Origin: Octopus sinensis
Lineage: Eukaryota
Reading direction: 5' to 3'
Assembly (NCBI RefSeq): GCF_006345805.1
Contig: NW_021832052.1
Span: 1-34,040 of the forward strand
Length of the DNA: 34,040 bases
Shown here: positions 3,309 through 33,543 of the stretch, piece after piece
Layout of the letters: the number at the start of each line of letters is the position of its first letter
Numbering within the stretch: the first letter of the stretch is position 1
The notes under the pieces: generated by a model
The model's input: the letters and a program-made list of their open reading frames with translations, nothing else
The model's database searches: none
What the model was told of the DNA's origin: nothing
Made by a program: the position numbers and the translations under genes

Positions 3309-5238
3309 CAGTAGTTTTATTTTTATAGCGTGCTTTCACTTCACTACCGAGCGCAGCTCTGTGTGCCTTGGGTATGTGCTGTGCTGTGTTTTGTTGTGAT
3401 GCTCTGATGGTTATTGTATGGAAGTGTTCTGCGTAGGATGTGTGCAGTGCCTAGTAGTGCAATTTTCTGTATGTTGTATGTGTTTGTGAGTCCTGGGTTT
3501 TTGTTATGTATTTGTCTGAATATTTTTTTATCATGCCTAATGCACCTACTATGATAGGAATTGTTTCTGTTTTCAGGTTTCACATTCTAGTTATTTCTAT
3601 TTCCAGGTCTTTGTATTTTAAGAGTTTCTCCATTTCTTTTAGAGACACGTTGTCATCTGCCGGTATTGATACATCAATTAGAAAGCATTTTTTTTCTTCA
3701 TGATCTCTGACGACTATATCTGGTCTGTTGGCCTTAATTTCTCTATCTGTGTGTATCGGCATATCCCAGAGTATGGTTGCTTTCTCGTTTTCTGTGACCT
3801 TTTCTGGTGTGTGCCTATACCATCTTTTTTCTGTTGTTATTCCATAATGTTGGCATAGCTTCCAATGTATGTAGGTTCCAACTCTGTCATGTCTGTGAAT
3901 ATATTCCTTCTTAGCCAGGACTGGGCAGCTAGAGATAATATGATTTATTGTTTCTTGTCCATCTCCACATATTCTGCAGTTACTTATAATATTTCTTTTC
4001 ATTACATGTTTTTGGTATTTCTGGTGGGGAGGCTTTGGTCTTGTGCTGCAATTAAAAATCCCTCTGTTTCTGCTTTGAGTCCTGAGCTTCTCAACCATTG
4101 CTGGGATTTTTCTTTGTCTATTTCTTTTGCGTTTAGTTTAATGCAGTATTTACCATGAAGGGGCTTTTCTTGCCATCGTTTTATCATGGCTCGTTGCTGT
4201 TCTATTTTTAGTTTGGATTTCATTTGTTTTTATAGCTTTTGTTGTTTCTTCATCACATCTCTTCTTCTTCTTTGTGTTTATTAGGCGGTATGATTTCTTG
4301 TTTGTATTGTCAGCTTCCTTAAATACTGAGAACAGTTTTTTTGTTTTGCTCGTGTTTTGCTGCTATCTGGATCAGTTTTCCTTCCTTCTGAAGTAGGTAT
4401 TTTTGCAGTCCTATGGTGGTTATTTTATAGTAGTTTTTCCAGCTGTATAAGGCCTCTACCACCTTCTATTACGTTGTATATATCGTCTTTCTATGTCAAT
4501 TTTGGGTGATGCATCCTAGATCCTGTCAGTATTTTTCTTGTTTTCCTATCTATTTTGGACAGTTCATTTCGTGTCCAGTTAAGGATATTGTAGCTGTAAC
4601 TTATAACTGGGACAGCTAAAGTGTTGATACCTATTATCTTGTTTTTAGCATTGAGCTCTGTTTTTAGTATTGATCTAACTCGCTTAAATATTCTTTTTTT
4701 ATTTTCTCTTTCATTTGTGTGTGTTGTGTCTTACTCGTTCATGGATTCCTAAGTTTTGTAAGTTTGGTTTTGGTCTAATTCTTTTATTTCATTGGTTTTA
4801 TCTATGTGATGTTTTACTCTTAACTAGTTTTCTCTTTTAAAGGTTACTTTGGCAGTTTCTAATTAATTCGCAATGTTTCATATCTATTTCTTGGTTGGTA
4901 AATCCATGAACTGTCTTTAATAGTGTTTCCAGCTGTTTGTCATTTGCATTTGCATAGTATAGTTCCATCCATATATAAAAGGTGGCTGATCGGTTTTGCC
5001 GTAACATTTATATCCCGCATCCAGTTCTTTTAGCATATCAGATAGATATATAGCATAGAGGACAGTGCCAAGCAGAAAAGGAGTGAGAGAGCGTGTCTCC
5101 TGGAATATCCTACTTTTAATGGGGATCTTTGGTTTTCATGAGTCCCTTTTGTTTGGAGGTGTAGGACTGTTGGCCATTTATTCATAGAGTGCTCTATGAA
5201 TTTTATGATTGTTGGTGCTACTTTGGTAATGGCTAGTG
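3309..5238 (-). mobile_element. R4/Dong-clade non-LTR retrotransposon (RLE type), 5'-truncated and frameshifted
   Basis: Degenerate RT (ISHLLYMD at about 4967-4991), WQEKPLHGKY, LKAETEGFLIAAQDQSL, CCHC knuckle CRICGDGQETINHIISSC (3925-3978), RLE core RPDIVV..LIDVSIP..KEMEK..KY, C-terminal IQKIALLGTAHILRRTL. Flanked by (ATT)n on both sides. Confidence 0.9.
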
Positions 5239-6937: not shown

Positions 6938-7146
6938 GAGACAGTAAGCTGGTGGAGTCATTAGCACACTGGGCTAAAGGCCTAACAGTATTTCACCTGT
7001 CTGTATGTTCTGTGTTCAAATTCCGCCGAGGTCAACTTTACCTTTTGGGGTCGATAAAATAAGTATCGGTTGAGCACCGGGGTTGATATAATTGACTCAT
7101 CCCCTCACCCAAAATCACTGCCCCTGCAGCAAAATTTAAAACAATT
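6938..7146 (+). mobile_element. tRNA-derived SINE, family A
   Basis: B-box GTTCAAATTCC at 7014-7024, followed by GCCGAGGTCAACTT..GGGGTCGATAAAATAAGTA shared with 7165-7300, 14967-15185 and 15475-15600. (ATT)n tail. Confidence 0.8.
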
Positions 7147-7164
7147 ATCATTATTATTATTATT

Positions 7165-7300
7165 GAATTCCACCGAGGTTGACTTTGATTTTCATCTTTC
7201 TGGGGTTGATAAATCAAGTACCAGTTGAGTACTGGGGTTGATGTGATCGACTGGCCCCATCCCCACAAAATGCAGGCCTTGTGCCCATAGTAGAAAGGAT
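7165..7300 (+). mobile_element. SINE family A, 5'-truncated copy
   Basis: Aligns by eye to 7020-7146. Confidence 0.75.
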
Positions 7301-7354
7301 TATCATTATTATTTTGGCTTGACTCAGGTTCGATCTTATTCCTGGTAGCAATAA

Positions 7355-8454
7355 CCGTAAAAAACCCATGTAATTTGCGCACCTGTGTAATTTGCGCACC
7401 TGTGTAATTTACGCAGGTGATTTACAGGATTAGATTTGTTAGAGAAAGCTTCTACTCAAGTAAACTTCACACCCAAAAGTTTTCAGAATTACCAATATGG
7501 CCAAGGGGAAAAGGTTTTCAATTTAGTTGTATTTAGCATAATTTCACTTATGATTAGATTTTCTTAAATTTTCTTTAAATAAAAATAATTTCTAATTAAC
7601 AGGTATCACATTGAAATCTGTTAAATTACAAAGTATTTGTGTTGTTTATAATAAACTTTATTTTACATTTCTTGGCCACGAGAGATTATGTCCGATCTTT
7701 AGCATACTTTTGTATGTCTTCTCAAATCAGGATCACAGGAAAAGTTTTTGATAAGAATTATCAACAAAAACAAAGCGGATAAAGTGTTGCAAATTAAGTT
7801 TAATTAAGTTTAATTAGCAATAAACATCAGCTTGGATGACACTTTACTCAACCGACAAAGGAAGGTGACCAATCAAACTGATGATGGAAACAGAATTCTT
7901 TTCTGCAGAGTCTAGTCAGAACCTTTGATATGGAGGATCGAAATTTTAATCCCTTTCACACTTATAAAATGTCAAGCAAACTTAAACATTTGTCATTACT
8001 TTTATTGTCAGTATGGGCAGAACTTATGAATCGTTTGCTGTGAAGGAGAAATTAAATATGTGCTCCATTGCGATAGATAGAAGCTCCAAGCAATGTAAAA
8101 TATGCCGAATAACCGTGTTTACCAGCATGAACGTCAGACTTCAAAAACTAGTTAACCATTTAATGGTTTTAGTAAATTTATACAGAAAAAGTAAGCATTA
8201 TACCGTCCAGCATAAACAGAAGTCAACTTCATTATGCGTATTTAAGCCATTATTTTCTCTGTAAAAAACTATTCTGACATTAAATGAGTCAACTTCCGGA
8301 ACAAATGTTTACGTTTCGTACATCTTTTTCCAATAAAAGAAATTTCAAAATAAATCCTGGAAACAATCTACTCATGTAATTCATGCAGCCCCTAAAATTT
8401 ATTTTCATTTTTCCGAAAAAAAAAAAATTGCATAAATTACATGGGTTTTTATGA
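7355..8454. mobile_element. Tigger/pogo-type non-autonomous DNA transposon (MITE B)
   Basis: TIRs CCGTAAAAAACCCATGTAATTTGCGC (7355) and reverse complement TCATAAAAACCCATGTAATTTATGC (ending 8454), TA at 8455-8456. Three tandem 17-bp subterminal units. Same end seen again at 28768-28885. MGRTYESFAVKEKL (8013) weakly resembles a pogo HTH start. Confidence 0.8.
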
Positions 8455-8719: not shown

Positions 8720-10262
8720 AGTGCCACCCAGCAGTAGTATTATACATACTGCCAGATTTCATAGTGCTAGCTACCCACTTTCACCCAGATCTTGTCGTAA
8801 TATTTGCATGTCTGACAAGCTCATTCTTCAACTCCCTGAACATCATTACAACATGACATTTTACTACTTTGAATTCCTCCACAACAGATGACAGGGGAAG
8901 TTGTGATTGTTCAGATCTTATGTACAGACCTATTGAAGTGAAGCTTGAGGGAACATCTTGCCATCTTTGGAGGTATTTATTTACCTTCCTTTCCACCCTA
9001 GTCCATGTCGGTAGAGCCATGCCCTGTATTTTTCTGGAAACCCTGATCTTTCAGTCCTCCTCAGCCACTCTTCTGCTTGCTTCACAGAATTGGTGACATT
9101 GCTTCTGACAGAGCGACTTCTCAACATCTTTCCAAGACATTTAATCAGATTTTCCTCTGTTGATGGTATGGGTTCTCCTTGCACTTGTAGCTTAATTTTG
9201 TTTGTTACTTTACCTCCTCTGGTTACCATACCCCTATATTTGGGAGGCTTAAACTTCTTTCTAACGAATATTACCATGTGTTCAAATGAGGTCAGCACCA
9301 TTTCTGCCTCCACATGGGTTGTAGTTGTTACCGGTGATATCATCCATGAAACCCCTTATTGGCTGCTGACAGCTGCCTGATTCCATTGTTGGTCCTTGGC
9401 CTTCATTTTCAACAGCTGACACGAGGAGATTCATAGCCATGATGAAAAGAATGAGGGAGATTGTGCAACCAGTTATGATTCCTTTCTCAAGGTCTTGCCA
9501 CTGACTTGTGAAGTGGGCTGTTCTGAAACATAACTCGATGCCTCCAAAGTGATTGCTGATTATTCCCTCTCAACAGGTGAGGAATATGGTAACAGTCAAG
9601 GGCTGCATATATGAGGCTGTGAGGAATTGATCCACATGCATTTTCCAGATCCAGCCAAACCACTGTCATGTCACCTTTACTTCTTTTGCCTCCCGAATCA
9701 GCTGGTTGTGTTCCAGACAGCCCGAGAAACCTGAGACCCCTACCTTTCTGGATAGAGGTGTTTATATACTCATTGTATGAGGTCACCCTTTTTTGGTCAG
9801 TACAGAAGGTTTTTCCCTCAACACTCAGGAAGGAGAATGGTCCTGAATTTGTTAATGGCTGATGAGTTTTCTTCCTTTGGCAGCACAAAACTTCCTTTCG
9901 GTGGAATGATACCATTTGTCCAGATCTTTCAGAATAGTGTCCACAGCCTCTGAAGGAGCCATGGGCATTTCTTGTATACTTTATAAGGTACACCACTTGG
10001 ACAGGAGCTGATCCTGATCTGGCCCCTTTCACAACCACTCGTCCCACTTCTTTCCAGAATAGACAACTGACATTGAACTCATTTCCTGGTATTTCAGCCC
10101 AAAAGACTTTTGGGTTAACATTAGGAGCTTGATTTCTGAGGTTATGGTTGTAGATCTCTCCCCCTCCACCCAGAAAAGCTTCTGCCTCTTCTCTGGAGCT
10201 GGTCCATTTCCCTGATTTGGTCCTCCCATGTCCCAACACTGTTCGGGTCAGCCTGAAAGGGT
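8720..10262 (-). mobile_element. Hero-like (R2-group) non-LTR retrotransposon RT remnant, heavily frameshifted
   Basis: ARSGSAP, LSVEGK, YINTSIQKG, KGDMTVVWLDLENACGSIPHSL, FKPPKYRGMV..GKVT, RSGFPEKYRAWLYRHGL, QLPLSSVVEEFKV: the order and motifs of Hero-clade RT/thumb regions. Confidence 0.8.
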
Positions 10263-10338
10263 CCACCTGTCATGTGCGTGTATATGTATGCGTTTGTGTA
10301 TGTGTGCATGCGTGTGTGTGTGTATGTGTGTCTACAGA

Positions 10339-10530
10339 CGAGGGAGTATTGAAATGTTTCTGGCTTCAGGTAAAACAAAATAGAGACGAATCACTTCATT
10401 AGCATTCTATTCACATATTCTCCCCTCTCACATTCACACACTTGTTGCAGTGGCCCTTCAGTTTTTCTAAGCCCTGGGAAAAGAACACAGCTGGTTCGGT
10501 CTTCAGCCAGTCCTCCGCAGCAGTGGTCAT
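10339..10530 (-). mobile_element. mariner element 3' end (transposase C-terminus and TIR)
   Basis: AEDWLKTEPAVFFSQGLEKLKGHCNKCVNVRG matches the mariner C-terminal pattern; CGAGGGAGTATTGAAATGTTTCTGGCT at 10339 is a mariner-type TIR. Confidence 0.7.
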
Positions 10531-10789
10531 GCCGGGTACTTTTCATCAACCCCTGTATACACATACCTACCCCCTAACTACACCACCGATGGATTAACGC
10601 AGAGACTAAAGGGAGATAACCATTCATATACCATTAACAGAAAATTAGCTCGGTTAAGACAGCATACACACACACACACACACAGATAGACAGATAGGTG
10701 GATAGAGAGAGAGAGACAGATAGACAGATAGATGGATAGAGAGAGAGACAGACAGATAGATATGTCAATAGAGAAATAGATAGACTGTT

Positions 10790-11853
10790 TGTAGTGATGT
10801 GCAGATTTTATGCTTTTGTAGCAATATCGCTTCTCCATTGCTATCTTCACTGTTGGGGGAAAGCAAAAAGAATGATCTCGTTTGAGATAACAAACATCTT
10901 TGGCTGGTTTAACGCTGTTGTAAACACTAAGCTGATTGGTTGGCAGTTGACACGTGGTCTCTACATAGTCCGCGCCACGTGACACGGATTGTCTCAACTT
11001 ATTTTCGCGCCACTGTCTCTAAACAGCCAATCACAGCCTTGGATTAAGATCCCCTTTCTGAGGTTCGTTTGAGCCACCCAAACAATATATAAAGGAGAGT
11101 TTTCAGGCACTTTTGGTCTGTCGGCTTAAGACCTTGTAAGGTCTTGGTTAGAGACCATATAACCAGACATAACGGCATCACCAACTCCGTCGCTACCTAC
11201 GAAGATTTAGCTCGTACATAAGATGGCTACAAAACCAACTCATACTGTTTGTGTGAAAACCACACCACGGAAAAACAGTTGCAGGAATCTATATCAAGAG
11301 GAACAGAAACCAAGCAAACATCGTCCCTAGCTACGAAGTTTTAAATAGTACACAAGACTATCACAGATCCAACTATAGCGGTTAGGTGAAATCTCACCAC
11401 GGAAAAAACGGCTGCAGTTAACATATCTGGAGTATATTCATATCAAGAGAAAGATAAACGCAACAAGCGATTCAACTAATCTCAGCTCCGAGACACAACA
11501 TCTTGATATTGAACTCTTACACCTCGTGTACCTCATAAACAGTAAATCAATTACCTGTCTTTAGTTCTTGTAAGAACTAGCTTCAGAGACAGCGCTAAAC
11601 AACAAAATGATACAAGGGTTCCTTAACCACTATGCCAATGTACGCTCAACAACCAAAGACTGTGCTATCTTCCACCATCAGGTACTTTTCTATGCCAACC
11701 ACATTCATTATTCTGTCACACACTAACACACAGACACAAACAAGTGTTGCATGCTCCCATACACTTCCAACCTTAACTTCATTCTAAATAAAATCTTATC
11801 TTGCCTCTCAAACAGTGACTTGTTGTCAATCCCTTATGTTCTATTGTGCTGCA
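10790..11853 (+). mobile_element. Possible solo LTR
   Basis: TGTAG...CTGCA ends, internal promoter, AATAAA near 11786, internal ~135-bp imperfect repeat. TSD only 3/4 (TGTT/TGTA), so boundaries are uncertain. Confidence 0.35.
10931..11100 (+). promoter_or_regulatory. Compact Pol II promoter-like cluster
   Basis: Reverse CCAAT (CTGATTGGTT, ATTGG 10935-10939), E-boxes CACGTG 10951-10956 and CACGTGAC 10976-10983, AGCCAATCAC (CCAAT 11027-11031), TATATAAAG 11086-11094; locally CpG-rich. Confidence 0.6.
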
Positions 11854-11952
11854 TGTATAAATGGTTTGTCTAACTCTTTAAGAATGGGATCGCGTGCGAT
11901 TCCCTATGGTTAATATAGGGCGTTACGATTATCAAATCAAAAAAAAAAATGT

Positions 11953-12338
11953 GTGTAATAGGTGTAAAACAACTTCCTATGAACGAATATGACAAAAAAA
12001 TTCGCGCACGCGAAAGGGGGTGGGGGAGAGGCCTCGGAAATTCACATCGGGAAGTTCCGAAAGCGTCTGAGGAGCTGACCCGGCACCAAAACAAAAAAAA
12101 AAATAGTGTAATATGTGTAAAACAACTTGCTCTAAACGAATATGACAAAAAAAAATGCGCTCTCGCGAAAGAGGGGTGGGGGAGAGGCCTCGGAAAATTT
12201 ATATCGGGAATTTCCGAAAGCGTCTGAACCGGGCACAAAAACAAAAACAAAAACAGCGTAATAGGTGTAAAACAATTGCTCTAAACGACTATCATGAAAA
12301 AAATGCGCGCTCGCGAAAGGGGGGTGGGGGAGAGGCCA
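11953..12338 (+). repeat. GC-rich tandem repeat, 2.6 units of ~150 bp, inside an unclassified element (~11870-12390)
   Basis: Units start at 11953, 12106 and 12256 (GTGTAATAGGTGTAAAACAA); each has GCGAAAG(G)nTGGGGGAGAGGCC. Confidence 0.9.
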
Positions 12339-12501
12339 CATATGATACGACCACATGTGATCCCGTTTTACTTTAAAGAAAGGAGTTTGTGAGAATTTTG
12401 GATAATTCGTTATAAGTGTTTTCATCTCATTCATTGGAACTTGTCAGATTTGAGTTTTACAGGAAACTTTGTCTTTTGTTGAAATCTGTTTTGCTTTGTT
12501 A

Positions 12502-12536
<35 letters not shown>

Positions 12537-12555
12537 AGAAAAAGAGGAAAGATGG

Positions 12556-13178
12556 GATGAGAGAAGGTAAGAGAGACAGAAGAGAAAAGAGAAAAAAAGG
12601 GATAAAGAAAGGAAGAAGGGAGATAAGAGACAAGCGATCTTTTTTCTTGTGTTGTTAGTTTTTTTCTGTAAGATGGATTTCATTTTAATATTTCGGGATG
12701 GTTTTGCAGTTTGTAGTTTTTCCCAAGGGGCCAATTTCCAGATGCCAGTTTTATGATTTTAAAAGAAGGTGTGGAGGAATAAAGGGCCAAACCACCAATG
12801 GAGAGTGCTTTGCCAACTTCCTGAGGCAGTTGTGGAATGCTCTCAAGACCAAACGCCAAGGAAAACTGAAGAATGGGGAATTGTTTCATCAAGACAATGC
12901 TCCAGCACACAAGTCCTTCGTTTCAATGGTTGCCGTGTGTGACTGTGGCTTTGAACAGGTTAATCGCCCTCCCTATTCTCCGGATTTAGCCCCATCTGAT
13001 CCCCAACATGAAGTAGCATTTGGCTGGGAACTAGTATCGCAGTGATGATGATTCTTCAGCAAACGGAGCCAAGCACTGCAACACCAAAGGGATGAGAGAA
13101 AGAAAAGAGAAAAAAAAGGGATAAAGAAAGGAAGAAGGGAGACAGAGAGAAAAGTGATCTTTGTTCTTGTTTTGTTTA
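12556..13178 (+). repeat. Purine-rich ~100 bp direct repeats (12556-12659 and 13089-13178)
   Basis: Shared GGGATGAGAGAA..AAGAGAAAAAAAGGGATAAAGAAAGGAAGAAGGGAGA..GATCTTT.TTCTTGT..TGTT.AG. Confidence 0.8.
12760..13075 (+). mobile_element. mariner transposase internal fragment
   Basis: HQDNAPAH (D at 12893) and PPYSPDLAPSD (D at 12998) with exact D34D spacing; no TIRs seen. Confidence 0.9.
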
Positions 13179-16828: not shown

Positions 16829-16990
16829 GGCGCAAGAGTGGCTGTGTGGTAAGTAGCTTCCTTACCAACCACATGGTTCCGGGTTCAGTCCCACTGCGTG
16901 GCACCTTGGGCAAGTGTCTTCTACTATAGCCTCAGGCTGACAAAAGGCTTGTGAATCAATTTTGTAGACGGAAACTGAAAGAAACCCGTC
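16829..16990 (+). mobile_element. tRNA-derived SINE family B, 5' half
   Basis: A-box-like TGGCTGTGTGG, B-box-like GGTTCAGTCCC, then GGCACCTTGGGCAAGTGTCTTCTACTATAGCC; preceded by a family A head fragment (~16760-16810). Confidence 0.85.
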
Positions 16991-17066
16991 ATATATATGC
17001 GTGTATATATATATATTTACACACATATATATATATACATACATATATATATATATATGTATATGG

Positions 17067-17113
<47 letters not shown>

Positions 17114-17220
17114 CATATATATAGATATATATATATATATATATATACATACACAGATATATATATACATACATACATAGATACATATATACATACATAC
17201 ATATATATGTATATATATTA

Positions 17221-17270
<50 letters not shown>

Positions 17271-17581
17271 AGGGGTTTTCTTCAATTTTCTTCTAACAAA
17301 AGGATCACAATTTTCTGATCAGCCAAAGGCATAATATCAATGAATGTATGTGAGTGTGTGTGTGTGTGTGCATGTATGCATATGTGTATGTGTGTATATG
17401 TATGCGTATGTGTGTGTGTGTGAGAATATATCAATATATACACACACTTCCTTACATATATACACCCATACATGCACACATGTATATCTATATATACACA
17501 CACATATATATGTATTTATCCATATGTATGTTTATACATGGATACACACACACACACACAAACACCTGTTTGTATATTCTT

Positions 17582-17759
17582 TACTCTTTTACTTGTTTCA
17601 ATCATTTGACTATGGCCACGCTGGAGCACCACCTATAGTCGAGCAAATCGACACCAGGACTTTTTTCTTTGTAAGCCTAGTACTTATTTTATCGGTCTCT
17701 TTTGCCGAACCGCTAAGTTACATAAACACACCAGCATCGGTTGTCAAGCGATGTTGGGG

Positions 17760-17792
<33 letters not shown>

Positions 17793-17963
17793 CATATATA
17801 CACTGGGCTTCTTTCAGTTTCCGTATACCAAATCCACTCACAATGCTTTGGTCGGCCTGAGGCTATAGTAGAAAACACTTGCCCAAGGTGCCACGCAATG
17901 GGACTGAACCCGGAACCATGTGGCTGGTAAACAAACTACTTACCACACAGCCACTCCTACACC
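17582..17963 (-). mobile_element. SINE family B, full length
   Basis: Reverse complement of 23329-23710, including the internal microsatellite and 3' GCTCCAGC.TGGCC tail. Confidence 0.9.
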
Positions 17964-21334: not shown

Positions 21335-21975
21335 AATTAAAAATGAGGGTGTCTAAGAGACACCAACATGCTGAAATAGCAGTCGAAACTCTGACTATAA
21401 AAACCACGTTAAAGTGTTCGTATCGCACCATGAGATAAGACAGAGGGACAAAATATACAAGCAAAAATTATTGAATAATTCAAGATCCAGGATTTCTGGT
21501 TTTGCTTTAAATAAGCTTTACCGTCATCGGTTGAATATATCAAGAGTACATAAATACAGATATATATATGCAGAACAAACGATATACTTACATACACGAA
21601 CGCCCATACATAAATACATATGCACGTATGCACGCGGCCAGTATCGTACTTATGGGATGATTCGGCGGGTAATTTAACTGGCCGCGTGCATACGTGCATA
21701 TGTATTTATGTATGGGCGTTCGTGTATGTAAGTATATCGTTTGTTCTGCATATATATATCTGTATTTATGTACTCTTGATATATTCAACCGATGACGGTA
21801 AAGCTTATTTAAAGCAAAACCAGAAATCCTGGATCTTGAATTATTCAATAATTTTTGCTTGTATATTTTGTCCCTCTGTCTTATCTCATGGTGCGATATG
21901 AACACTTAACGTGGTTTTTATAGTCAGAGTTTCGACTGCTATTTCGGCATGTTGGTGTCTCTTAGACACCCTCAT

Positions 21976-21983
<8 letters not shown>
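21335..21983. repeat. Near-perfect 308-bp inverted repeat with 34-bp spacer
   Basis: Arms 21335-21642 and 21677-21983; I count 2 substitutions and one 1-bp indel. Confidence 0.97.
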
Positions 21984-23328: not shown

Positions 23329-23710
23329 GTAGAAGTGGCTGTTTGGTCAGTAGATTGCTTACCAACCACATGGTTCTGTGTTCAGTCCCACTGCATGGCA
23401 CCTTGGGCAAGTGTCTTCTACTATAGCCTCGGGATGACCAAAGCCTTGTGAGTGAATTTGGTAGACGGAAACTGGAAGAAGCCCGTCGTATATATGTATA
23501 TATATGTATGTGTGTATATGTTTGTCCCCCCACCATTGCTTGACAACCAATGCTGGTGTGTTTATGTCCCCGTAACTTAGCGGTTCAGCAAAAGAGACTG
23601 ATAGAATAAGTACTAGGCTTACAAAGAATAAGTCCTGGGGTCGATTTACTCTACTTGAAGGTGGTGCTCCAGCATGGCCGCAGTCAAAAGACTGAAACAA
23701 GTAAACGAGA
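23329..23710 (+). mobile_element. SINE family B, full length
   Basis: Head, CCTTGGGCAAG core, internal (TA/GT)n, 3' GGTGCTCCAGCATGGCCGCAGTCAAAAGACTGAAACAAG. Confidence 0.9.
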
Positions 23711-23799
23711 GAAAAAGAGAGAAAAGATATATATATACACACGTATATTAACAAATGTGTGAACATAACCATGTAAATATATTTACTTGTATGTGTATG

Positions 23800-24015
23800 T
23801 TGATCTTTTACTGGATCCTGCAGTCATTAAACTACGGCCAAGCTGGGGCACCACCTTGGGGTATTCTTTGCCATTCAAATGGACTGACTCTGCACATATT
23901 TCATTTCTTTGTCTGGAACTTATTCTATTGGTACCTTTTGCTGAACTGCTTAGGTACAAGGACAGAGACACACCAAAACACACACAGACGTGAAGACACA
24001 CACACACACACACAC

Positions 24016-24070
<55 letters not shown>

Positions 24071-24212
24071 CAATGGTCTTCTATCAGTTTCCATCTACCA
24101 AATCTAATCACAAAGCCTTGGTTGGCCTGAGGTTAGAGTAGCAGTCACTTGCCCAAGGTGCCATGTAGTGGGACTGAACCCTGAACCATGTGCTTGGGAA
24201 GTAAACTTATTA
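23800..24212 (-). mobile_element. SINE family B, diverged
   Basis: CACTTGCCCAAGGTGCC..GGGACTGAACC; inverted relative to 23329. Confidence 0.8.
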
Positions 24213-26712: not shown

Positions 26713-26764
26713 ATTAGCATGTACTTATGTATGTATTTATGTATATGTGTGTATATTTCAATAT

Positions 26765-27150
26765 TTTACTTGATTCAGTCATTAGATTGTGGCCATGCTG
26801 GGGCACTGCCTTGGGGTATTCTTTGCTTGTCAAATCGATTCACCCTACACTTATTTTCTTTGTCAGTGCAGTACTTATTCTATTGGTCCCTTTTGACAAA
26901 CCACTAAGTTACGGGGATATGAACACACTGCCATGGATTGTCAAGCAGTGGCAAGGCACAAATACAAAAATTAGGTTTAGGGTTGGTCTTCTTTCAGTTC
27001 AGTCTACCAAATCCACTCACACATATTTAATTAGCCCAATGCTTTGGTAGAAAACACTTGCCCGAGGTACCAAGCAATGGGACTGAACCTACAATAATGT
27101 GGTTGAGAAGCAACCACATTCAAGTTTCTTACTACAGAGCCACTTCTGCA
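26765..27150 (-). mobile_element. SINE family B, diverged
   Basis: ACACTTGCCCGAGGTACC..GGGACTGAACC; 3' GGCCATGCTGGGGCAC. Confidence 0.75.
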
Positions 27151-29025: not shown

Positions 29026-30272
29026 CAGTAGAACTCCTCTAATTCGAACGTGTGCTATGTTGAAAATATTTCCTCTTACATTTCCGGGTACCCCTTCTAG
29101 TATTTAATGTATATATTAAGATGAGCACATTATATATTTTAAAGAATTGTTAAATATCATTGCTTGGGGGGAAAAAATTTGAAAATAAATTAATATTAAA
29201 TAATGTTAATTTACTTTCAAATTTTTTTTCTAATTAAATAAATGTTAATTGTTAGGTATTTATTACATAAATTATCTGCATTTAACAACCAATCACCAAT
29301 GTAGAATACTTTTATGCGTTCATTGAATGAGCTTCTTCACTTTTGTTTCTGTCTTCATTTATCAAACTGACGGGGTCTGCCATTGCATTCCTCAAGCGAT
29401 CACCAAACTCCACTATTTCCTCGTGCTGTAGTCTCTTTATGATCATATCCTTTCAAAGTGACATTGCTTGCCAAAAATAGTTGTCACTAAAGTAAGGATT
29501 TCTTTCTAGAAATTTTATCACTATCTCCATAGACTTTTCTGTCATCTTATCCCATGATATTTCCTCATTAGAGTGTTCTTGGCCATTTACATAAGATTCA
29601 CTCGAATGGGAGCCATTGCTGTCACTAATTTCATGACCAATATTGTCTTCAGGACATTGTTCAGTGTTTTCTTCATCTTGTCAAACCCACATTTCAATTC
29701 CATTTGCATCAAGTGATTGAAGAACGGTGTGTTTGGTTGGAAATCCTCTACTTTCAAGAATATTTTGTACTCCAGATACATTTTCTGCTTCTTTCACTTT
29801 AGGAGCACAAGACACTGGGTATAATTTCCCCCACGCTTCTGTTAATGTGCCTGCTCAAACCTGATTCCATGCACTTGCAAGGGAAAAAATGGCATCTTTG
29901 ATGGTAAAATTGCACTGGAAATTGCCTATACTAACATTGCTATTTATCATATTCATCTTGAAATCATTTCTGTAGAAACGTTTTAAGCTCCAAATAATCC
30001 CTTGCTCCAGAGGTTGAATGAGAGATGTCACATTCGGTGGTAAGTAGCACGTAAAAACATTCCCACACGATGACACTAGTTTTGTGTCGTGAGGATGTGC
30101 TCTGCAATTGTCTAATAGCTGCAGGCACTTTGAATCAGGTTTACCACATTTGTGAGAGCGCTTTTGTTCAGCTGGCACAAATTCTTGGATGAACCATTCT
30201 GTGAACAAGTGTTCATTCATCCACCTGTTTTTTGAAGAGTAATATAATACTGGTAAAGGTGAAACTCCTTTA
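29026..30272 (-). mobile_element. Tigger/pogo transposon, 3' half (DDE_1-type transposase remnant)
   Basis: TA|CAGTAGAACTCCTCTAATTCGAAC TIR at 29026; [53 protein letters not shown], where the third catalytic Asp of QPLDQG reads E. Confidence 0.9.
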
Positions 30273-30700: not shown

Positions 30701-30719
30701 CATATATATATATATATAT
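30273..30719. repeat. (TA)n microsatellite
   Basis: Visible run. Confidence 0.95.
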
Positions 30720-31145
30720 TGGCAGCTGACTTGGCAGACACCCATAAAAATATCAACCATTGTACAAACAATAACTCTGAGCACCTTTTCAAACTCCACC
30801 CATCTAACACCCGTGGACATATTTACAAAGTAAGAAAACAGCACAGCTCCCATGACTTCAGGAAACATTTTTTCACGCTGAGAGTTGCTGAAGCGTGGAA
30901 CAAACTGCCGGCATCAGTTGTTAGTTGTCGGAGCACTGCATCCTTCAAAACTTCCATGCTTCCTGAGATTCGCCAACACTACACTTGATTTTCTCCCCTC
31001 CATACACACACAAGCATGTATCTGACTCATACATTGTTCGCTTTCCAGACATTTCTACATTACTGCATATACTTTATATGCACTTTCTGACAAGTTGTGG
31101 TGCACTTGAGCATTGTATACAATTAATTTCATTATTATTATTATT
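30720..31145 (+). mobile_element. CR1/L2-group LINE, short 3' copy 3
   Basis: Near-identical to 1557-1980 and 33135-33560; (ATT)n tail. Confidence 0.95.
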
Positions 31146-31839: not shown

Positions 31840-33543
31840 AATTCCATCTTCATCACCACTGACATCGGACTCTATATCTACTATGCAATTTACACCAGCA
31901 ATGCTGCAACGCCACCTTAAGAATAAACGCAATTATGCCTCTCCTGGTCTCGATGGTGTTACATACCTACTTCTCAAACGCGGTGGGTACTTTCTTCTAA
32001 GCCAACTTTTTCTATTCTTCCAATTCTGTCTCGACAATGGTGTTACTCCAGAACAGTGGAAAACTGCCAGTGTCATCCCTCTGTTAAAAAAAGGCGACCG
32101 CACATCGCCTGTCAACTATTGCCCCATCAGTCTTACTAGCTGCATCGCCAAACTGATGGAATCCTGTATCAGAGAAACCCTCTGGAACTTCTGGAAGTCT
32201 CACAGCCTCATCCAGCCGTCACAATTCGGATTTATTCCTAACTCCAGCTGCTGTAATCAACTCATCGAGTTTCTTGAGGACGTTACCCAAATCACTGATC
32301 GTGGATCCTGGGTGGATGTTGTTTACCTGGACTTCGCTAAGGCTTTTAACTCTGTGCCACACAAAAGACTTATGGTGAAGCTTTCTGCGTTGGGTGTAAG
32401 AGACGAACTCTATAACTGGTTGAAGTCCTTTATTTTCAGCCGAAAAGAGGTTGTCACAGTTCTAGGACAGCACTCTTCGCCCTATGAGATGACATCTGGT
32501 GTACCACAGGGATCTGTTCTTGGCCCCCTTTTATTTGTTGCATATGTTAATGACATAGATGCCTACTTAAAGAATGCCACAGTGCTGAAATATGCAGATG
32601 ACATCAAGCTGTACCTCGAAATAAAGAGGTCAAATCCTGTAAACTATAGATCTCTATTGCAAGCAGACCTGGACACAATGCAGCAGTGGATCATGGACTG
32701 GCAACTCAAGCTGGCTGTGGACAAATGTACCACCATGCATTTTGGGAGTAGAAACCCAGCGTCCACCTACTCCCTCCACAACACTAGTCTCAAAAAGTCT
32801 TCATGTGAACGTGACCTGGGTGTTATTGTCGACAGTGATTTGCGTTGGACAAAACACATCGCTGAAATTGTCAAGAAGGCTGAGGGTGTCTTGGCATCAC
32901 TCACCAAATCCTTTGTGAGCCGCTCTCCGGCTATCTATCTGCGGCTTTATATAGCTATGGTAAGACCTCACCTGGAATTTGCATCACCGGTCTAGAACCC
33001 CTATCTTGCCCAGGATATCAATCGTCTGAAAGCTGTTCAGCGACGTGCAACCAAAAGAATACCCTCCATCAGGCATTTGCCATATCCTGAACGCCTTACT
33101 TCCCTGGGCATAGACACATTGAAACTCCGACGTCTGGAAGCTGACTTGGCAGACATCCATAAAATTATCAACCATCGTACAAACAATAACTCTGAGCACC
33201 TTTTCAAACTCCACCCATCGAACACCCGTGGACATATTTACAAAGTAAGAAAACAGCACAGCTCCCATGACTTCAGGAAACATTTTTTCACGCTGAGAGT
33301 TGCTGAAGCATGGAATAAACTGCCGGCATCAGTTGTTAGTTGTCGGAGCACTGCATCCTTCAAAACTTCCATGCTTCCTGAGATTCGCCAACACTACACC
33401 TGATCTTTCTCCCCTCCATACACACACAAGCATGTCTCTGACTCATACATTGTTCGCTTTCCAGACATTTTTACATTACTGCATATACTTTATATGCACT
33501 TTCTGACAAGTTGTGGTGCACTTGAGCACTGTATACAATAATT

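What the first reader, a model, noticed from the sequence alone, without database searches (positions are those of the whole stretch)
10790..11160. Compact promoter with a long hairpin starting at the predicted transcription start
Seen: two CCAAT boxes in opposite orientations, two CACGTG E-boxes and TATATAAAG (11086) within 170 bp. About 29 nt after the TATA, where a TSS is expected, G11115 begins an extended hairpin: GGTCT..AGACC outer stem (11115-11156) enclosing a perfect AAGACCTT-GT-AAGGTCTT core. Established: LTR R regions often start with a 5' hairpin. Inference: a solo LTR or captured promoter making a structured RNA. It is the most ordered non-coding stretch in the window and matches no family I recognise.
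Basis: partly seen in the sequence, partly recalled or inferred. Interest (0 to 1): 0.7.

Follow-up and report, generated by a model that had tools for sequence, protein, structure and literature searches.

The report
Promoter-like cluster with a repeated hairpin
A 160-bp stretch carries a significant cluster of classical RNA polymerase II promoter motifs, followed by a hairpin that recurs 440 bases downstream with its base pairs preserved, but nothing shows it is a solo LTR and its origin could not be settled without the source genome.

Summary
An inverted CCAAT (10933-10941), two CACGTG boxes (10951, 10976), a CCAAT (11025-11033) and TATATAAAG (11086) are all present. I also found the window's only E2F consensus, at 11003-11010. 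This is the densest promoter-motif cluster in the 34 kb: it was matched in 1 of 1000 shuffles for the exact motif set and 1 of 500 for an 11-motif panel. The hairpin at 11114-11157 is real (-20.2 kcal/mol, z = -3.2).

New here: a homologous second hairpin, H2, lies at 11555-11592. It has the same UGUA loop and the same 3' AGAGAC. Of 13 shared pairs, 8 are identical, 5 changed on both sides and none is broken (null 88 in 2,000,000). Two diverged 134-149-nt tandem repeats lie between the hairpins. All six frames are closed.

The solo-LTR reading is not supported. There is no second copy in the window, no target-site duplication above chance, no PBS or PPT, and no gag or pol genes nearby. A Helentron-type (HINE) reading fails its subterminal inverted-repeat test.

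The best reading is a Pol II promoter driving a roughly 0.6-0.7 kb structured non-coding RNA, of host or repeat origin (confidence 0.4). No copies, orthologues or expression data could be reached because the source genome is not in any searchable collection. Interest is modest.

The parts
10660..10785 (.). Left boundary: (AC)n then an (AGAT/AGAC/AGAG)n microsatellite. Read on the minus strand it is (ATCT/GTCT/CTCT)n.
10933..10941 (-). Inverted CCAAT box matching the extended NF-Y pattern (AACCAATCA). The first C is at -176 from G11115.
10951..10956 (.). E-box 1, CACGTG, at -164. It is 11 bp from the edge of the inverted CCAAT, on that box's 5' side.
10976..10981 (.). E-box 2, CACGTG (CCACGTGAC), at -139.
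11003..11010 (+). E2F-type site TTTCGCGC at -112. It is the only TTTSGCGC match in the 34 kb.
11025..11033 (+). Forward CCAAT box matching the extended NF-Y pattern (AGCCAATCA). The first C is at -88.
11086..11094 (+). TATA box TATATAAAG. The first T is at -29 from G11115.
11114..11157 (+). Hairpin H1: outer stem 11114-11119/11152-11157, middle G.U-rich helix 11123-11126/11146-11149, inner stem 11128-11134/11139-11145, loop UGUA. Energy is -20.2 kcal/mol on the plus strand and -14.5 on the minus strand.
11183..11316 (+). Tandem repeat unit A (134 nt). It contains the only AUG in strong Kozak context (11223), which opens a 35-codon frame not kept in unit B.
11317..11466 (+). Tandem repeat unit B (150 nt), 73-77% identical to A.
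11555..11592 (+). Hairpin H2, a paralogue of H1, with the same CTTGTAAG centre, UGUA loop and 3' AGAGAC. Of 13 shared pairs, 8 are the same and 5 changed on both sides. Energy is -13.1 kcal/mol, z = -2.4.
11787..11792 (+). AATAAA, followed about 21-24 nt later by CA and a GT-rich stretch. This is a possible poly(A) site that would end a roughly 0.7 kb RNA. The evidence is weak: AATAAA occurs 30 times in the window.

Best explanation
The segment 10930-11095 is an RNA polymerase II proximal and core promoter. It has two NF-Y-type CCAAT boxes in opposite orientation, two CACGTG boxes for bHLH-ZIP factors of the USF or Myc/Max type, one E2F-type site and a consensus TATA box.

It would start plus-strand transcription at about G11115 (plus or minus 5 nt), so the RNA begins with hairpin H1. 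The transcript then runs through two diverged tandem repeats and a second copy of the hairpin module (H2). It carries no real reading frame. It may end at the AATAAA at 11787, giving roughly 0.7 kb, or be spliced further on.

The two hairpins are the selected parts of the RNA. They are most simply reiterated binding or processing modules, and the cap-proximal one would also hinder ribosome scanning. Whether the unit is a single-copy host non-coding RNA gene or the promoter and leader of an unclassified repeat family is open.

Shown: the motifs, their spacing, their statistical excess, the hairpins, the compensatory changes and the lack of coding capacity. Inferred: factor binding, the start site, the 3' end and any function of the hairpins.
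For: - **Motif cluster.** It is present and unusual. The exact cluster appears in 1 of 1000 shuffles. On an 11-motif panel it is the densest promoter-motif window of the whole 34 kb, matched in 1 of 500 shuffles.
- **Individual motifs.** Both CCAAT boxes fit RRCCAATSR. The only TTTSGCGC in the window is here.
- **Geometry.** It is canonical: TATA at -29, CCAAT at -88, and the other sites between -112 and -176.
- **Literature.** In human data, NF-Y sites are positioned with E-boxes, E2F motifs and TATA in a CCAAT-orientation-specific way, at promoters and in LTRs (PMC3730095; PMC4889920).
- **Hairpin H1.** z = -3.2.
- **Hairpin H2.** It is homologous to H1: 13 shared pairs, 5 changed on both sides, none broken. 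Ten random substitutions keep all pairs in 88 of 2,000,000 trials. RNAalifold independently reports 3 compensatory pairs in the inner stem.
- **Strand.** The plus strand folds better than the minus strand (-20.2 against -14.5, and -13.1 against -12.3) because of G.U pairs. This fits an RNA read in the promoter's direction.
- **No coding capacity.** All six frames have 12-26 stops per 362-363 codons.
- **CpG.** Observed/expected is 0.76-0.83 over 10751-11500, against 0.62 for the whole window.
Against: - No expression data and no homologous copy or orthologue could be obtained, so neither transcription nor conservation of the motifs is shown.
- The motif sets were chosen after seeing the sequence.
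- The compensatory-change argument rests on two sequences. I set the outer-stem register by hand from the shared AGAGAC.
- Palindromes kept at the DNA level, such as transposon ends or protein-binding sites, would give the same pattern.
- The spacings do not reproduce the human NF-Y registers. TATA lies at +59 from the first C of the forward CCAAT, where PMC3730095 reports +50. Whether the E-box gap of 11 bp from the CCAAT edge matches the published -12/-11 could not be decided without the matrix definitions.
- CpG enrichment is not distinctive: other parts of the window are higher.
- The region sits among transposon fragments and microsatellites, with no host exon visible in the window.
Confidence: 0.4

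Rival explanations
1. Solo LTR of an LTR retrotransposon or endogenous retrovirus. U3 would be about 10787-11114 with the enhancer and TATA. R would start at 11115 with a TAR-like hairpin and contain the poly(A) signal. U5 would end at a CA near 11853.
For: - The signals come in the order of an LTR: enhancer-type motifs, TATA, a start-site hairpin, then AATAAA at 11787.
- A TG lies at 10786/10787, directly after the microsatellite.
- NF-Y, E-box and TATA modules are typical of some LTR families (PMC3730095, PMC4889920, PMC12065363).
- Internal tandem repeats are common in LTRs.
Against: - There is no second copy anywhere in the 34 kb.
- TG...CA boundaries with a 5-6-bp target-site duplication give 5 candidates, about the number expected by chance, and none is at the proposed ends.
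- No tRNA-primer-site-like sequence follows the proposed 3' end, and no gag, pol or integrase frames are nearby.
- The R-U5 part would be about 740 nt, which is unusually long.
- No related sequence was found in any collection reachable here. Those collections lack the source genome, so this is weak evidence.
Confidence: 0.12
2. A non-autonomous DNA element of the tandem-repeat-bearing kind known from molluscs and insects (Helentron-associated HINE/DINE-1-like, or a similar MITE). H1 and H2 would be its subterminal palindromes, kept as DNA hairpins for transposition. Repeats A and B would be its central repeats. The promoter-like cluster would be adjacent sequence, and the TATA-to-hairpin spacing a coincidence.
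For: - Part of the architecture matches published HINE structure, which has a 5' subterminal repeat with its complementary inverted repeat, central tandem repeats and a 3' palindrome (PMC4067079, PMC7492417).
- Both palindromes keep their symmetry through paired changes. This is what a DNA hairpin under selection would also show.
- A GTCY/ATCT-type microsatellite lies 330 bp away. GTCY-type microsatellites are typical of HINEs (PMC7492417).
- TTTT flanks sit at 11111-11114 and 11687-11690.
- The neighbouring 150-bp tandem repeat with palindromes (11887-12337) suggests such elements exist in this genome.
Against: - The defining 11-15-bp subterminal inverted repeats with at most 1-2 mismatches are absent. 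No inverted match of at least 10 in 12 exists between the H1 region and 11540-11700.
- The microsatellite is on the wrong side of H1 for a plus-strand element, and is separated from it by the promoter cluster.
- TTTT occurs 10.7 times per kb, so the flanks say nothing.
- There is no other copy in a transposon-rich 34 kb.
- This reading leaves the significant motif cluster unexplained.
- The plus strand folds better than the minus strand through G.U pairs.
Confidence: 0.18
3. No function: a decayed piece of intergenic or repeat sequence in which motifs and palindromes cluster by chance or by local duplication.
For: - The motifs were picked after reading the sequence.
- The genome is AT-rich and repeat-rich.
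- H1 and H2 could descend from one local duplication.
- There is no evidence of transcription or conservation.
Against: The shuffle tests give 1 in 1000 and 1 in 500. Five paired changes with no broken pair among 13 is very unlikely under neutral decay (88 in 2,000,000), while the surrounding duplicated sequence has diverged to about 73%.
Confidence: 0.15

Closest known systems
NF-Y / E-box / E2F / TATA proximal promoters of RNA polymerase II, including LTR12-type LTR promoters bound by NF-Y and USF (PMC3730095, PMC4889920, PMC12065363)
   Same: There are two CCAAT boxes with the extended NF-Y consensus. CACGTG boxes lie next to and between them. An E2F consensus is present. A consensus TATA lies about 30 nt before a pyrimidine-purine step, and the proximal CCAAT is at -88.
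   Different: The organism is not a vertebrate, and binding is untested. The TATA offset from the CCAAT is +59, against the reported +50. No coding gene lies downstream. No transcription evidence is available.
Retroviral or LTR-retrotransposon LTR with a 5' hairpin at the start of R (TAR-like)
   Same: The signals come in the same order, the hairpin begins at the predicted +1, and a poly(A) hexamer lies downstream.
   Different: There is no LTR pair, no target-site duplication, no PBS or PPT and no internal genes. The hairpin is repeated 440 nt further on, which is not an LTR feature. R-U5 would be about 740 nt.
HINE / DINE-1 / pearl-type Helentron-associated non-autonomous elements (PMC4067079, PMC7492417)
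   Same: The unit is non-coding, with palindromes near both ends of a segment that holds central tandem repeats, and a tetranucleotide GTCY/ATCT-type microsatellite is close by.
   Different: The subterminal inverted-repeat criterion is not met. The microsatellite is misplaced. The boundaries are not defined, and copy number is unknown.
Cap-proximal regulatory 5'UTR hairpins such as the ferritin iron-responsive element
   Same: H1 is a stable hairpin within a few nucleotides of the predicted cap, with a single bulged pyrimidine on the 5' strand below the upper stem. It sits downstream of a CCAAT/TATA promoter.
   Different: The loop is UGUA (or UUGUAA), not CAGUGN. The bulge is a U, 6-7 pairs below the loop. 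Rfam IRE models and all other Rfam families give no hit, even at E up to 5.

Membership tests
Solo LTR / LTR retrotransposon | A second, similar LTR in direct orientation, or many dispersed solo copies | tested here: not met
   Self-BLASTN of 10500-12000 against the window finds no other copy. Genome-wide copy number is not testable here.
Solo LTR / LTR retrotransposon | TG...CA termini flanked by a 4-6-bp target-site duplication | tested here: not met
   An exhaustive search of TG (10330-11000) against CA (11200-12700) with 5-6-bp duplications gave 5 candidates, about the chance expectation. None is at 10787/11853.
Solo LTR / LTR retrotransposon | Adjacent primer-binding site or polypurine tract, and internal gag-pol | tested here: not met
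   By reading, no PBS-like sequence follows the candidate 3' ends. The only purine-rich tract upstream is the microsatellite. The neighbouring reading frames are LINE and DNA-transposon fragments. A true solo LTR need not have these features.
Solo LTR / LTR retrotransposon | U3-R-U5 signal order (enhancer, TATA, start, poly(A) signal) | tested here: inconclusive
   The order is present. However, AATAAA occurs 30 times in 34 kb, and R-U5 would be about 740 nt.
RNA polymerase II TATA/CCAAT promoter | Consensus TATA about 25-35 nt upstream of a pyrimidine-purine start | tested here: met
   TATATAAAG is at 11086, and T11114/G11115 is 29 nt downstream.
RNA polymerase II TATA/CCAAT promoter | NF-Y-type CCAAT box(es) with extended consensus in the proximal region | tested here: met
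   AGCCAATCA is at -88 and AACCAATCA (inverted) at -176. These are 2 of the 6 RRCCAATSR matches in 34 kb.
RNA polymerase II TATA/CCAAT promoter | Motif density above background | tested here: met
   1 of 1000 and 1 of 500 shuffles reach the observed cluster. The motifs were chosen post hoc.
RNA polymerase II TATA/CCAAT promoter | Capped transcripts starting at the predicted site | not testable with these tools
   No transcriptome or 5'-end data for the source organism are available here.
HINE / DINE-1-like Helentron-associated element | 11-15-bp subterminal inverted repeats with at most 1-2 mismatches | tested here: not met
   No inverted match of at least 10 in 12 exists between 11100-11170 and 11540-11700. 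The arm-to-arm comparison gives 5 of 12. Criteria are from PMC4067079 and PMC7492417.
HINE / DINE-1-like Helentron-associated element | Central tandem repeats between a left and a right module | tested here: met
   Units A and B, 134 and 150 nt and 73-77% identical, lie between H1 and H2.
HINE / DINE-1-like Helentron-associated element | Microsatellite inside the left module, a 3' palindrome 8-35 bp from the end, and insertion at TT without duplication | tested here: inconclusive
   The microsatellite lies upstream of the promoter cluster, not between H1 and the repeats. Only a 4-bp palindrome follows H2. TTTT flanks are uninformative at 10.7 per kb.
Any Rfam RNA family (including IRE, 7SK, snRNAs, ribozymes, miRNA precursors) | Covariance-model match | tested here: not met
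   There were no matches at gathering thresholds in the window. At E up to 5 in 10300-12500, only far-sub-threshold matches appeared. ARAGORN found no tRNA.

The most novel reading that the evidence does not exclude
The unit is a lineage-specific non-coding RNA gene, or the transcribed leader of an undescribed repeat family. Its RNA carries a reiterated, selectively maintained hairpin module: a UGUA loop, a 7-bp inner stem, a 3' linker and an outer stem ending in AGAGAC. No Rfam family has this module. It would act as a repeated binding or processing site, placed once exactly at the cap.
Probability: 0.15. Interest if true: 0.55.

Novelty: new member of a known kind. Interest (0 to 1): 0.3.

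Why it matters
If the unit is transcribed, it gives a compact, well-delimited invertebrate Pol II promoter of about 200 bp with NF-Y, E-box, E2F and TATA sites. It also gives a small structured RNA module that selection has kept twice within one transcript. Such a module would be a candidate new RNA element and a useful annotation marker in a repeat-rich genome. If instead it turns out to be a repeat family, it would show which host factors that family uses for expression. On present evidence it is a plausible but ordinary promoter-like locus, not a surprise.

Tried and rejected
**Searches for copies or orthologues. All were empty.**
- Window ORFs looked up by exact sequence.
- Single-frame translation of 10786-11870, with X at stops, against 5.8 billion proteins.
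- Minus-strand ORF 10788-10997 against 1.84 billion representatives. Only spurious hits to tandem-repeat proteins came back.
- Exact 23-24-mers of the hairpin and of the CCAAT/E-box segment in JGI metagenome contigs and in IMG/VR.
- The same strings in the full text of papers.

**Source organism. Not identified.**
- The window's LINE proteins find at best 61-83% identical relatives, in unnamed ENA and Logan contigs and in NCBI assembly GCA_024449705.1.
- The accession strings are not in the paper library.

**Readings considered and rejected.**
- ER-stress element (CCAAT-N9-CCACG) and carbohydrate-response element (two E-boxes 5 nt apart): the spacings do not fit on reading.
- Iron-responsive element, 7SK or U6-type Pol III gene, spliced-leader RNA, hammerhead or HDV-like ribozymes, miRNA precursor: no Rfam support, and the loop or stem sizes are wrong.
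- Protein-coding first exon: every frame is closed. The 25-codon stretch from the ATG at 11607 to the GT at 11682 has no match in the protein collection.
- CpG-island argument: CpG observed/expected here is only intermediate, and other repeats in the window are higher.
The ORF list and the ten ORFs already scanned showed only transposon domains.

Full report
**Context.** The window is eukaryotic, AT-rich (33% G+C), and crowded with microsatellites and transposon fragments:
- CR1-like LINE reverse-transcriptase pieces at 1069-1822, 30719-30985 and 31844-33418.
- A degenerate LINE fragment on the minus strand at about 8950-10266.
- A mariner-type fragment at 12698-13045.
- A pogo-type DDE fragment at 29855-30220.
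- A LINE C-terminal zinc-finger (zf-RVT) ORF at 3580-4098, on the minus strand.

No host exon is recognisable. The finding lies between an (AC)n/(AGAT-AGAC-AGAG)n microsatellite (10660-10785) and a CpG-rich 150-bp tandem repeat (11934-12337).

**Check of the observation.**
- Inverted CCAAT at 10935, within AACCAATCA on the minus strand (10933-10941).
- CACGTG at 10951 and 10976.
- CCAAT at 11027, within AGCCAATCA (11025-11033).
- TATATAAAG at 11086.

I add an E2F-type TTTCGCGC at 11003-11010, the only match to TTTSGCGC in the 34 kb. Both CCAAT boxes fit the extended NF-Y pattern RRCCAATSR, which has only 6 matches in the window. CACGTG occurs 5 times in the window.

The cluster is above chance on two tests:
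- The exact cluster occurs in 1 of 1000 dinucleotide-preserving shuffles.
- On a panel of 11 classical proximal-promoter motifs, the densest 170-bp window in the whole sequence is exactly 10933-11025, with 5 hits of 3 kinds. That density is reached in 1 of 500 shuffles.

The motif sets were chosen after reading the sequence, so these figures are somewhat flattering.

Relative to G11115 the sites lie at -176, -164, -139, -112, -88 and -29. This is a textbook layout, and T11114/G11115 is a pyrimidine-purine step at the right distance from the TATA box.

**The hairpin.** Positions 11114-11157 fold into a 6-bp outer stem, a 4-bp G.U-rich middle helix and a 7-bp inner stem with a UGUA loop. The energy is -20.2 kcal/mol, z = -3.2 against shuffles, and 1 of 200 shuffles folds as well.

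**New: the hairpin is one of two.** The repeat search paired 11125-11149 with 11559-11583.
- The second site, H2 (11555-11592), folds the same way: a 7-bp inner stem, a UGUA loop, a 6-nt 3' linker and a 7-bp outer stem (-13.1 kcal/mol, z = -2.4).
- H1 and H2 share the CTTGTAAG centre, the loop and the 3' AGAGAC.
- Taken pair by pair, 13 pairs are common to both. Eight are identical, five differ on both sides and still pair, and none is broken.
- RNAalifold on the core independently reports 3 such pairs.
- Ten random substitutions over the 26 paired positions keep all pairs in 88 of 2,000,000 trials.
- The duplicated sequence between the hairpins has drifted to 73-77% identity.

The symmetry of the module has therefore been maintained, either as RNA structure or as a DNA palindrome. 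The plus strand folds better than the minus strand through G.U pairs, which mildly favours an RNA read in the promoter's direction. Caveats: there are only two sequences, and I fixed the outer-stem register from the shared AGAGAC.

**The rest of the unit.**
- Between H1 and H2 lie two diverged tandem units, A (11183-11316) and B (11317-11466).
- All six frames of 10786-11875 hold 12-26 stops.
- The first AUG (11223, strong context) opens only 35 codons and is lost in unit B.
- AATAAA at 11787 is followed by CA and a GT-rich stretch. It could end a roughly 0.7 kb RNA, but the hexamer occurs 30 times in the window.
- No Rfam family matches, even at E up to 5, and there is no tRNA.

**What it most likely is.** The best-supported reading is a Pol II promoter (NF-Y x2, bHLH-ZIP E-box x2, E2F, TATA) that starts a non-coding, internally repeated RNA at about 11115. 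H1 would sit at the cap and H2 440 nt downstream, as reiterated structural modules.

In human data, NF-Y sites are positioned with E-boxes, E2F motifs and TATA in an orientation-specific way at promoters and in LTRs (PMC3730095, PMC4889920). The same factors are plausible here. However, the published registers are not reproduced: TATA is at +59 here, not +50, and the E-box register cannot be compared without the matrix definitions. Factor binding, the start site, the 3' end and hairpin function are all inferences.

**Rivals.**
1. *Solo LTR.* The order of signals fits, but every tested hallmark fails.
   - There is no second copy in the window.
   - TG...CA ends with 5-6-bp duplications occur only at the chance rate, and not at the proposed ends.
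   - There are no PBS or PPT features and no gag-pol nearby.
2. *A tandem-repeat-bearing non-autonomous DNA element of the HINE/DINE-1 kind* (criteria from PMC4067079 and PMC7492417).
   - Palindromes flanking central repeats and a nearby GTCY/ATCT-type microsatellite are suggestive.
   - The defining subterminal inverted repeats are absent (no match of at least 10 in 12).
   - The microsatellite is on the wrong side.
   - The T-rich flanks carry no information (10.7 TTTT per kb).
   - The motif cluster would be left unexplained.
3. *Chance.* This is disfavoured.

**Limits.** The source genome is not in any collection available here.
- Exact look-ups of window ORFs fail.
- Translated searches of the region find nothing real.
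- Exact DNA scans of metagenome and viral contigs are empty.
- The window's own LINE proteins find only 61-83% identical relatives, in unnamed contigs and in assembly GCA_024449705.1.

**Verdict.** The 'promoter making a structured RNA' part is supported at the sequence level and strengthened by the second, co-varying hairpin. The 'solo LTR' part is not supported. The kind of thing is known, so interest is modest (0.3). The one reading that would raise it is a new reiterated structured-RNA module, to which I give about 0.15.

Noticed in passing
window 21335-21983: A very large, near-perfect palindrome. Arms 21412-21642 and 21677-21907 are 100% complementary over 231 nt and are extended by 78-nt arms at 99%, with a 34-nt spacer. 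CpG observed/expected is 1.35-1.54. It is either a young foldback element or a long-read assembly artefact.
   Followed up: partly
window 11887-12630: Two small palindromes (11887-11920) are followed by a CpG-rich 150-bp tandem repeat x2.7 (11934-12337), then a (TG)n and purine-rich microsatellite (12504-12630). Read on the minus strand, this resembles a tandem-repeat-bearing non-autonomous (HINE-like) element.
   Followed up: partly
window 12575-12623 and 13094-13142: The mariner-type DDE fragment (12698-13045) is bracketed by direct copies of a purine-rich ~50-nt segment, 84% identical.
   Followed up: no
window 7038-7382, 16862-17194, 17344-17868, 23359-23772, 23755-24141, 26727-27050: A short interspersed repeat is present at least five or six times in both orientations. 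It is recognisable from shared ORF translations (e.g. ...LFQSFD.GHAGAPP...). The family was not identified.
   Followed up: no
window 10955-10963, 11012-11025, 11145-11157, 11582-11592: A GTCTCT/AGAGAC-containing motif recurs. It appears twice in the promoter region in forward orientation, each time just after a CCAC(G) motif, and as the 3' arms of both hairpins in reverse orientation. It also resembles the adjacent AGAC/AGAG microsatellite, so it may be a low-complexity coincidence.
   Followed up: partly
window 10278-10331 and 10663-10684: (TG)n and (CA)n microsatellites in inverted orientation bracket a 330-bp unclassified segment, directly left of the finding.
   Followed up: no
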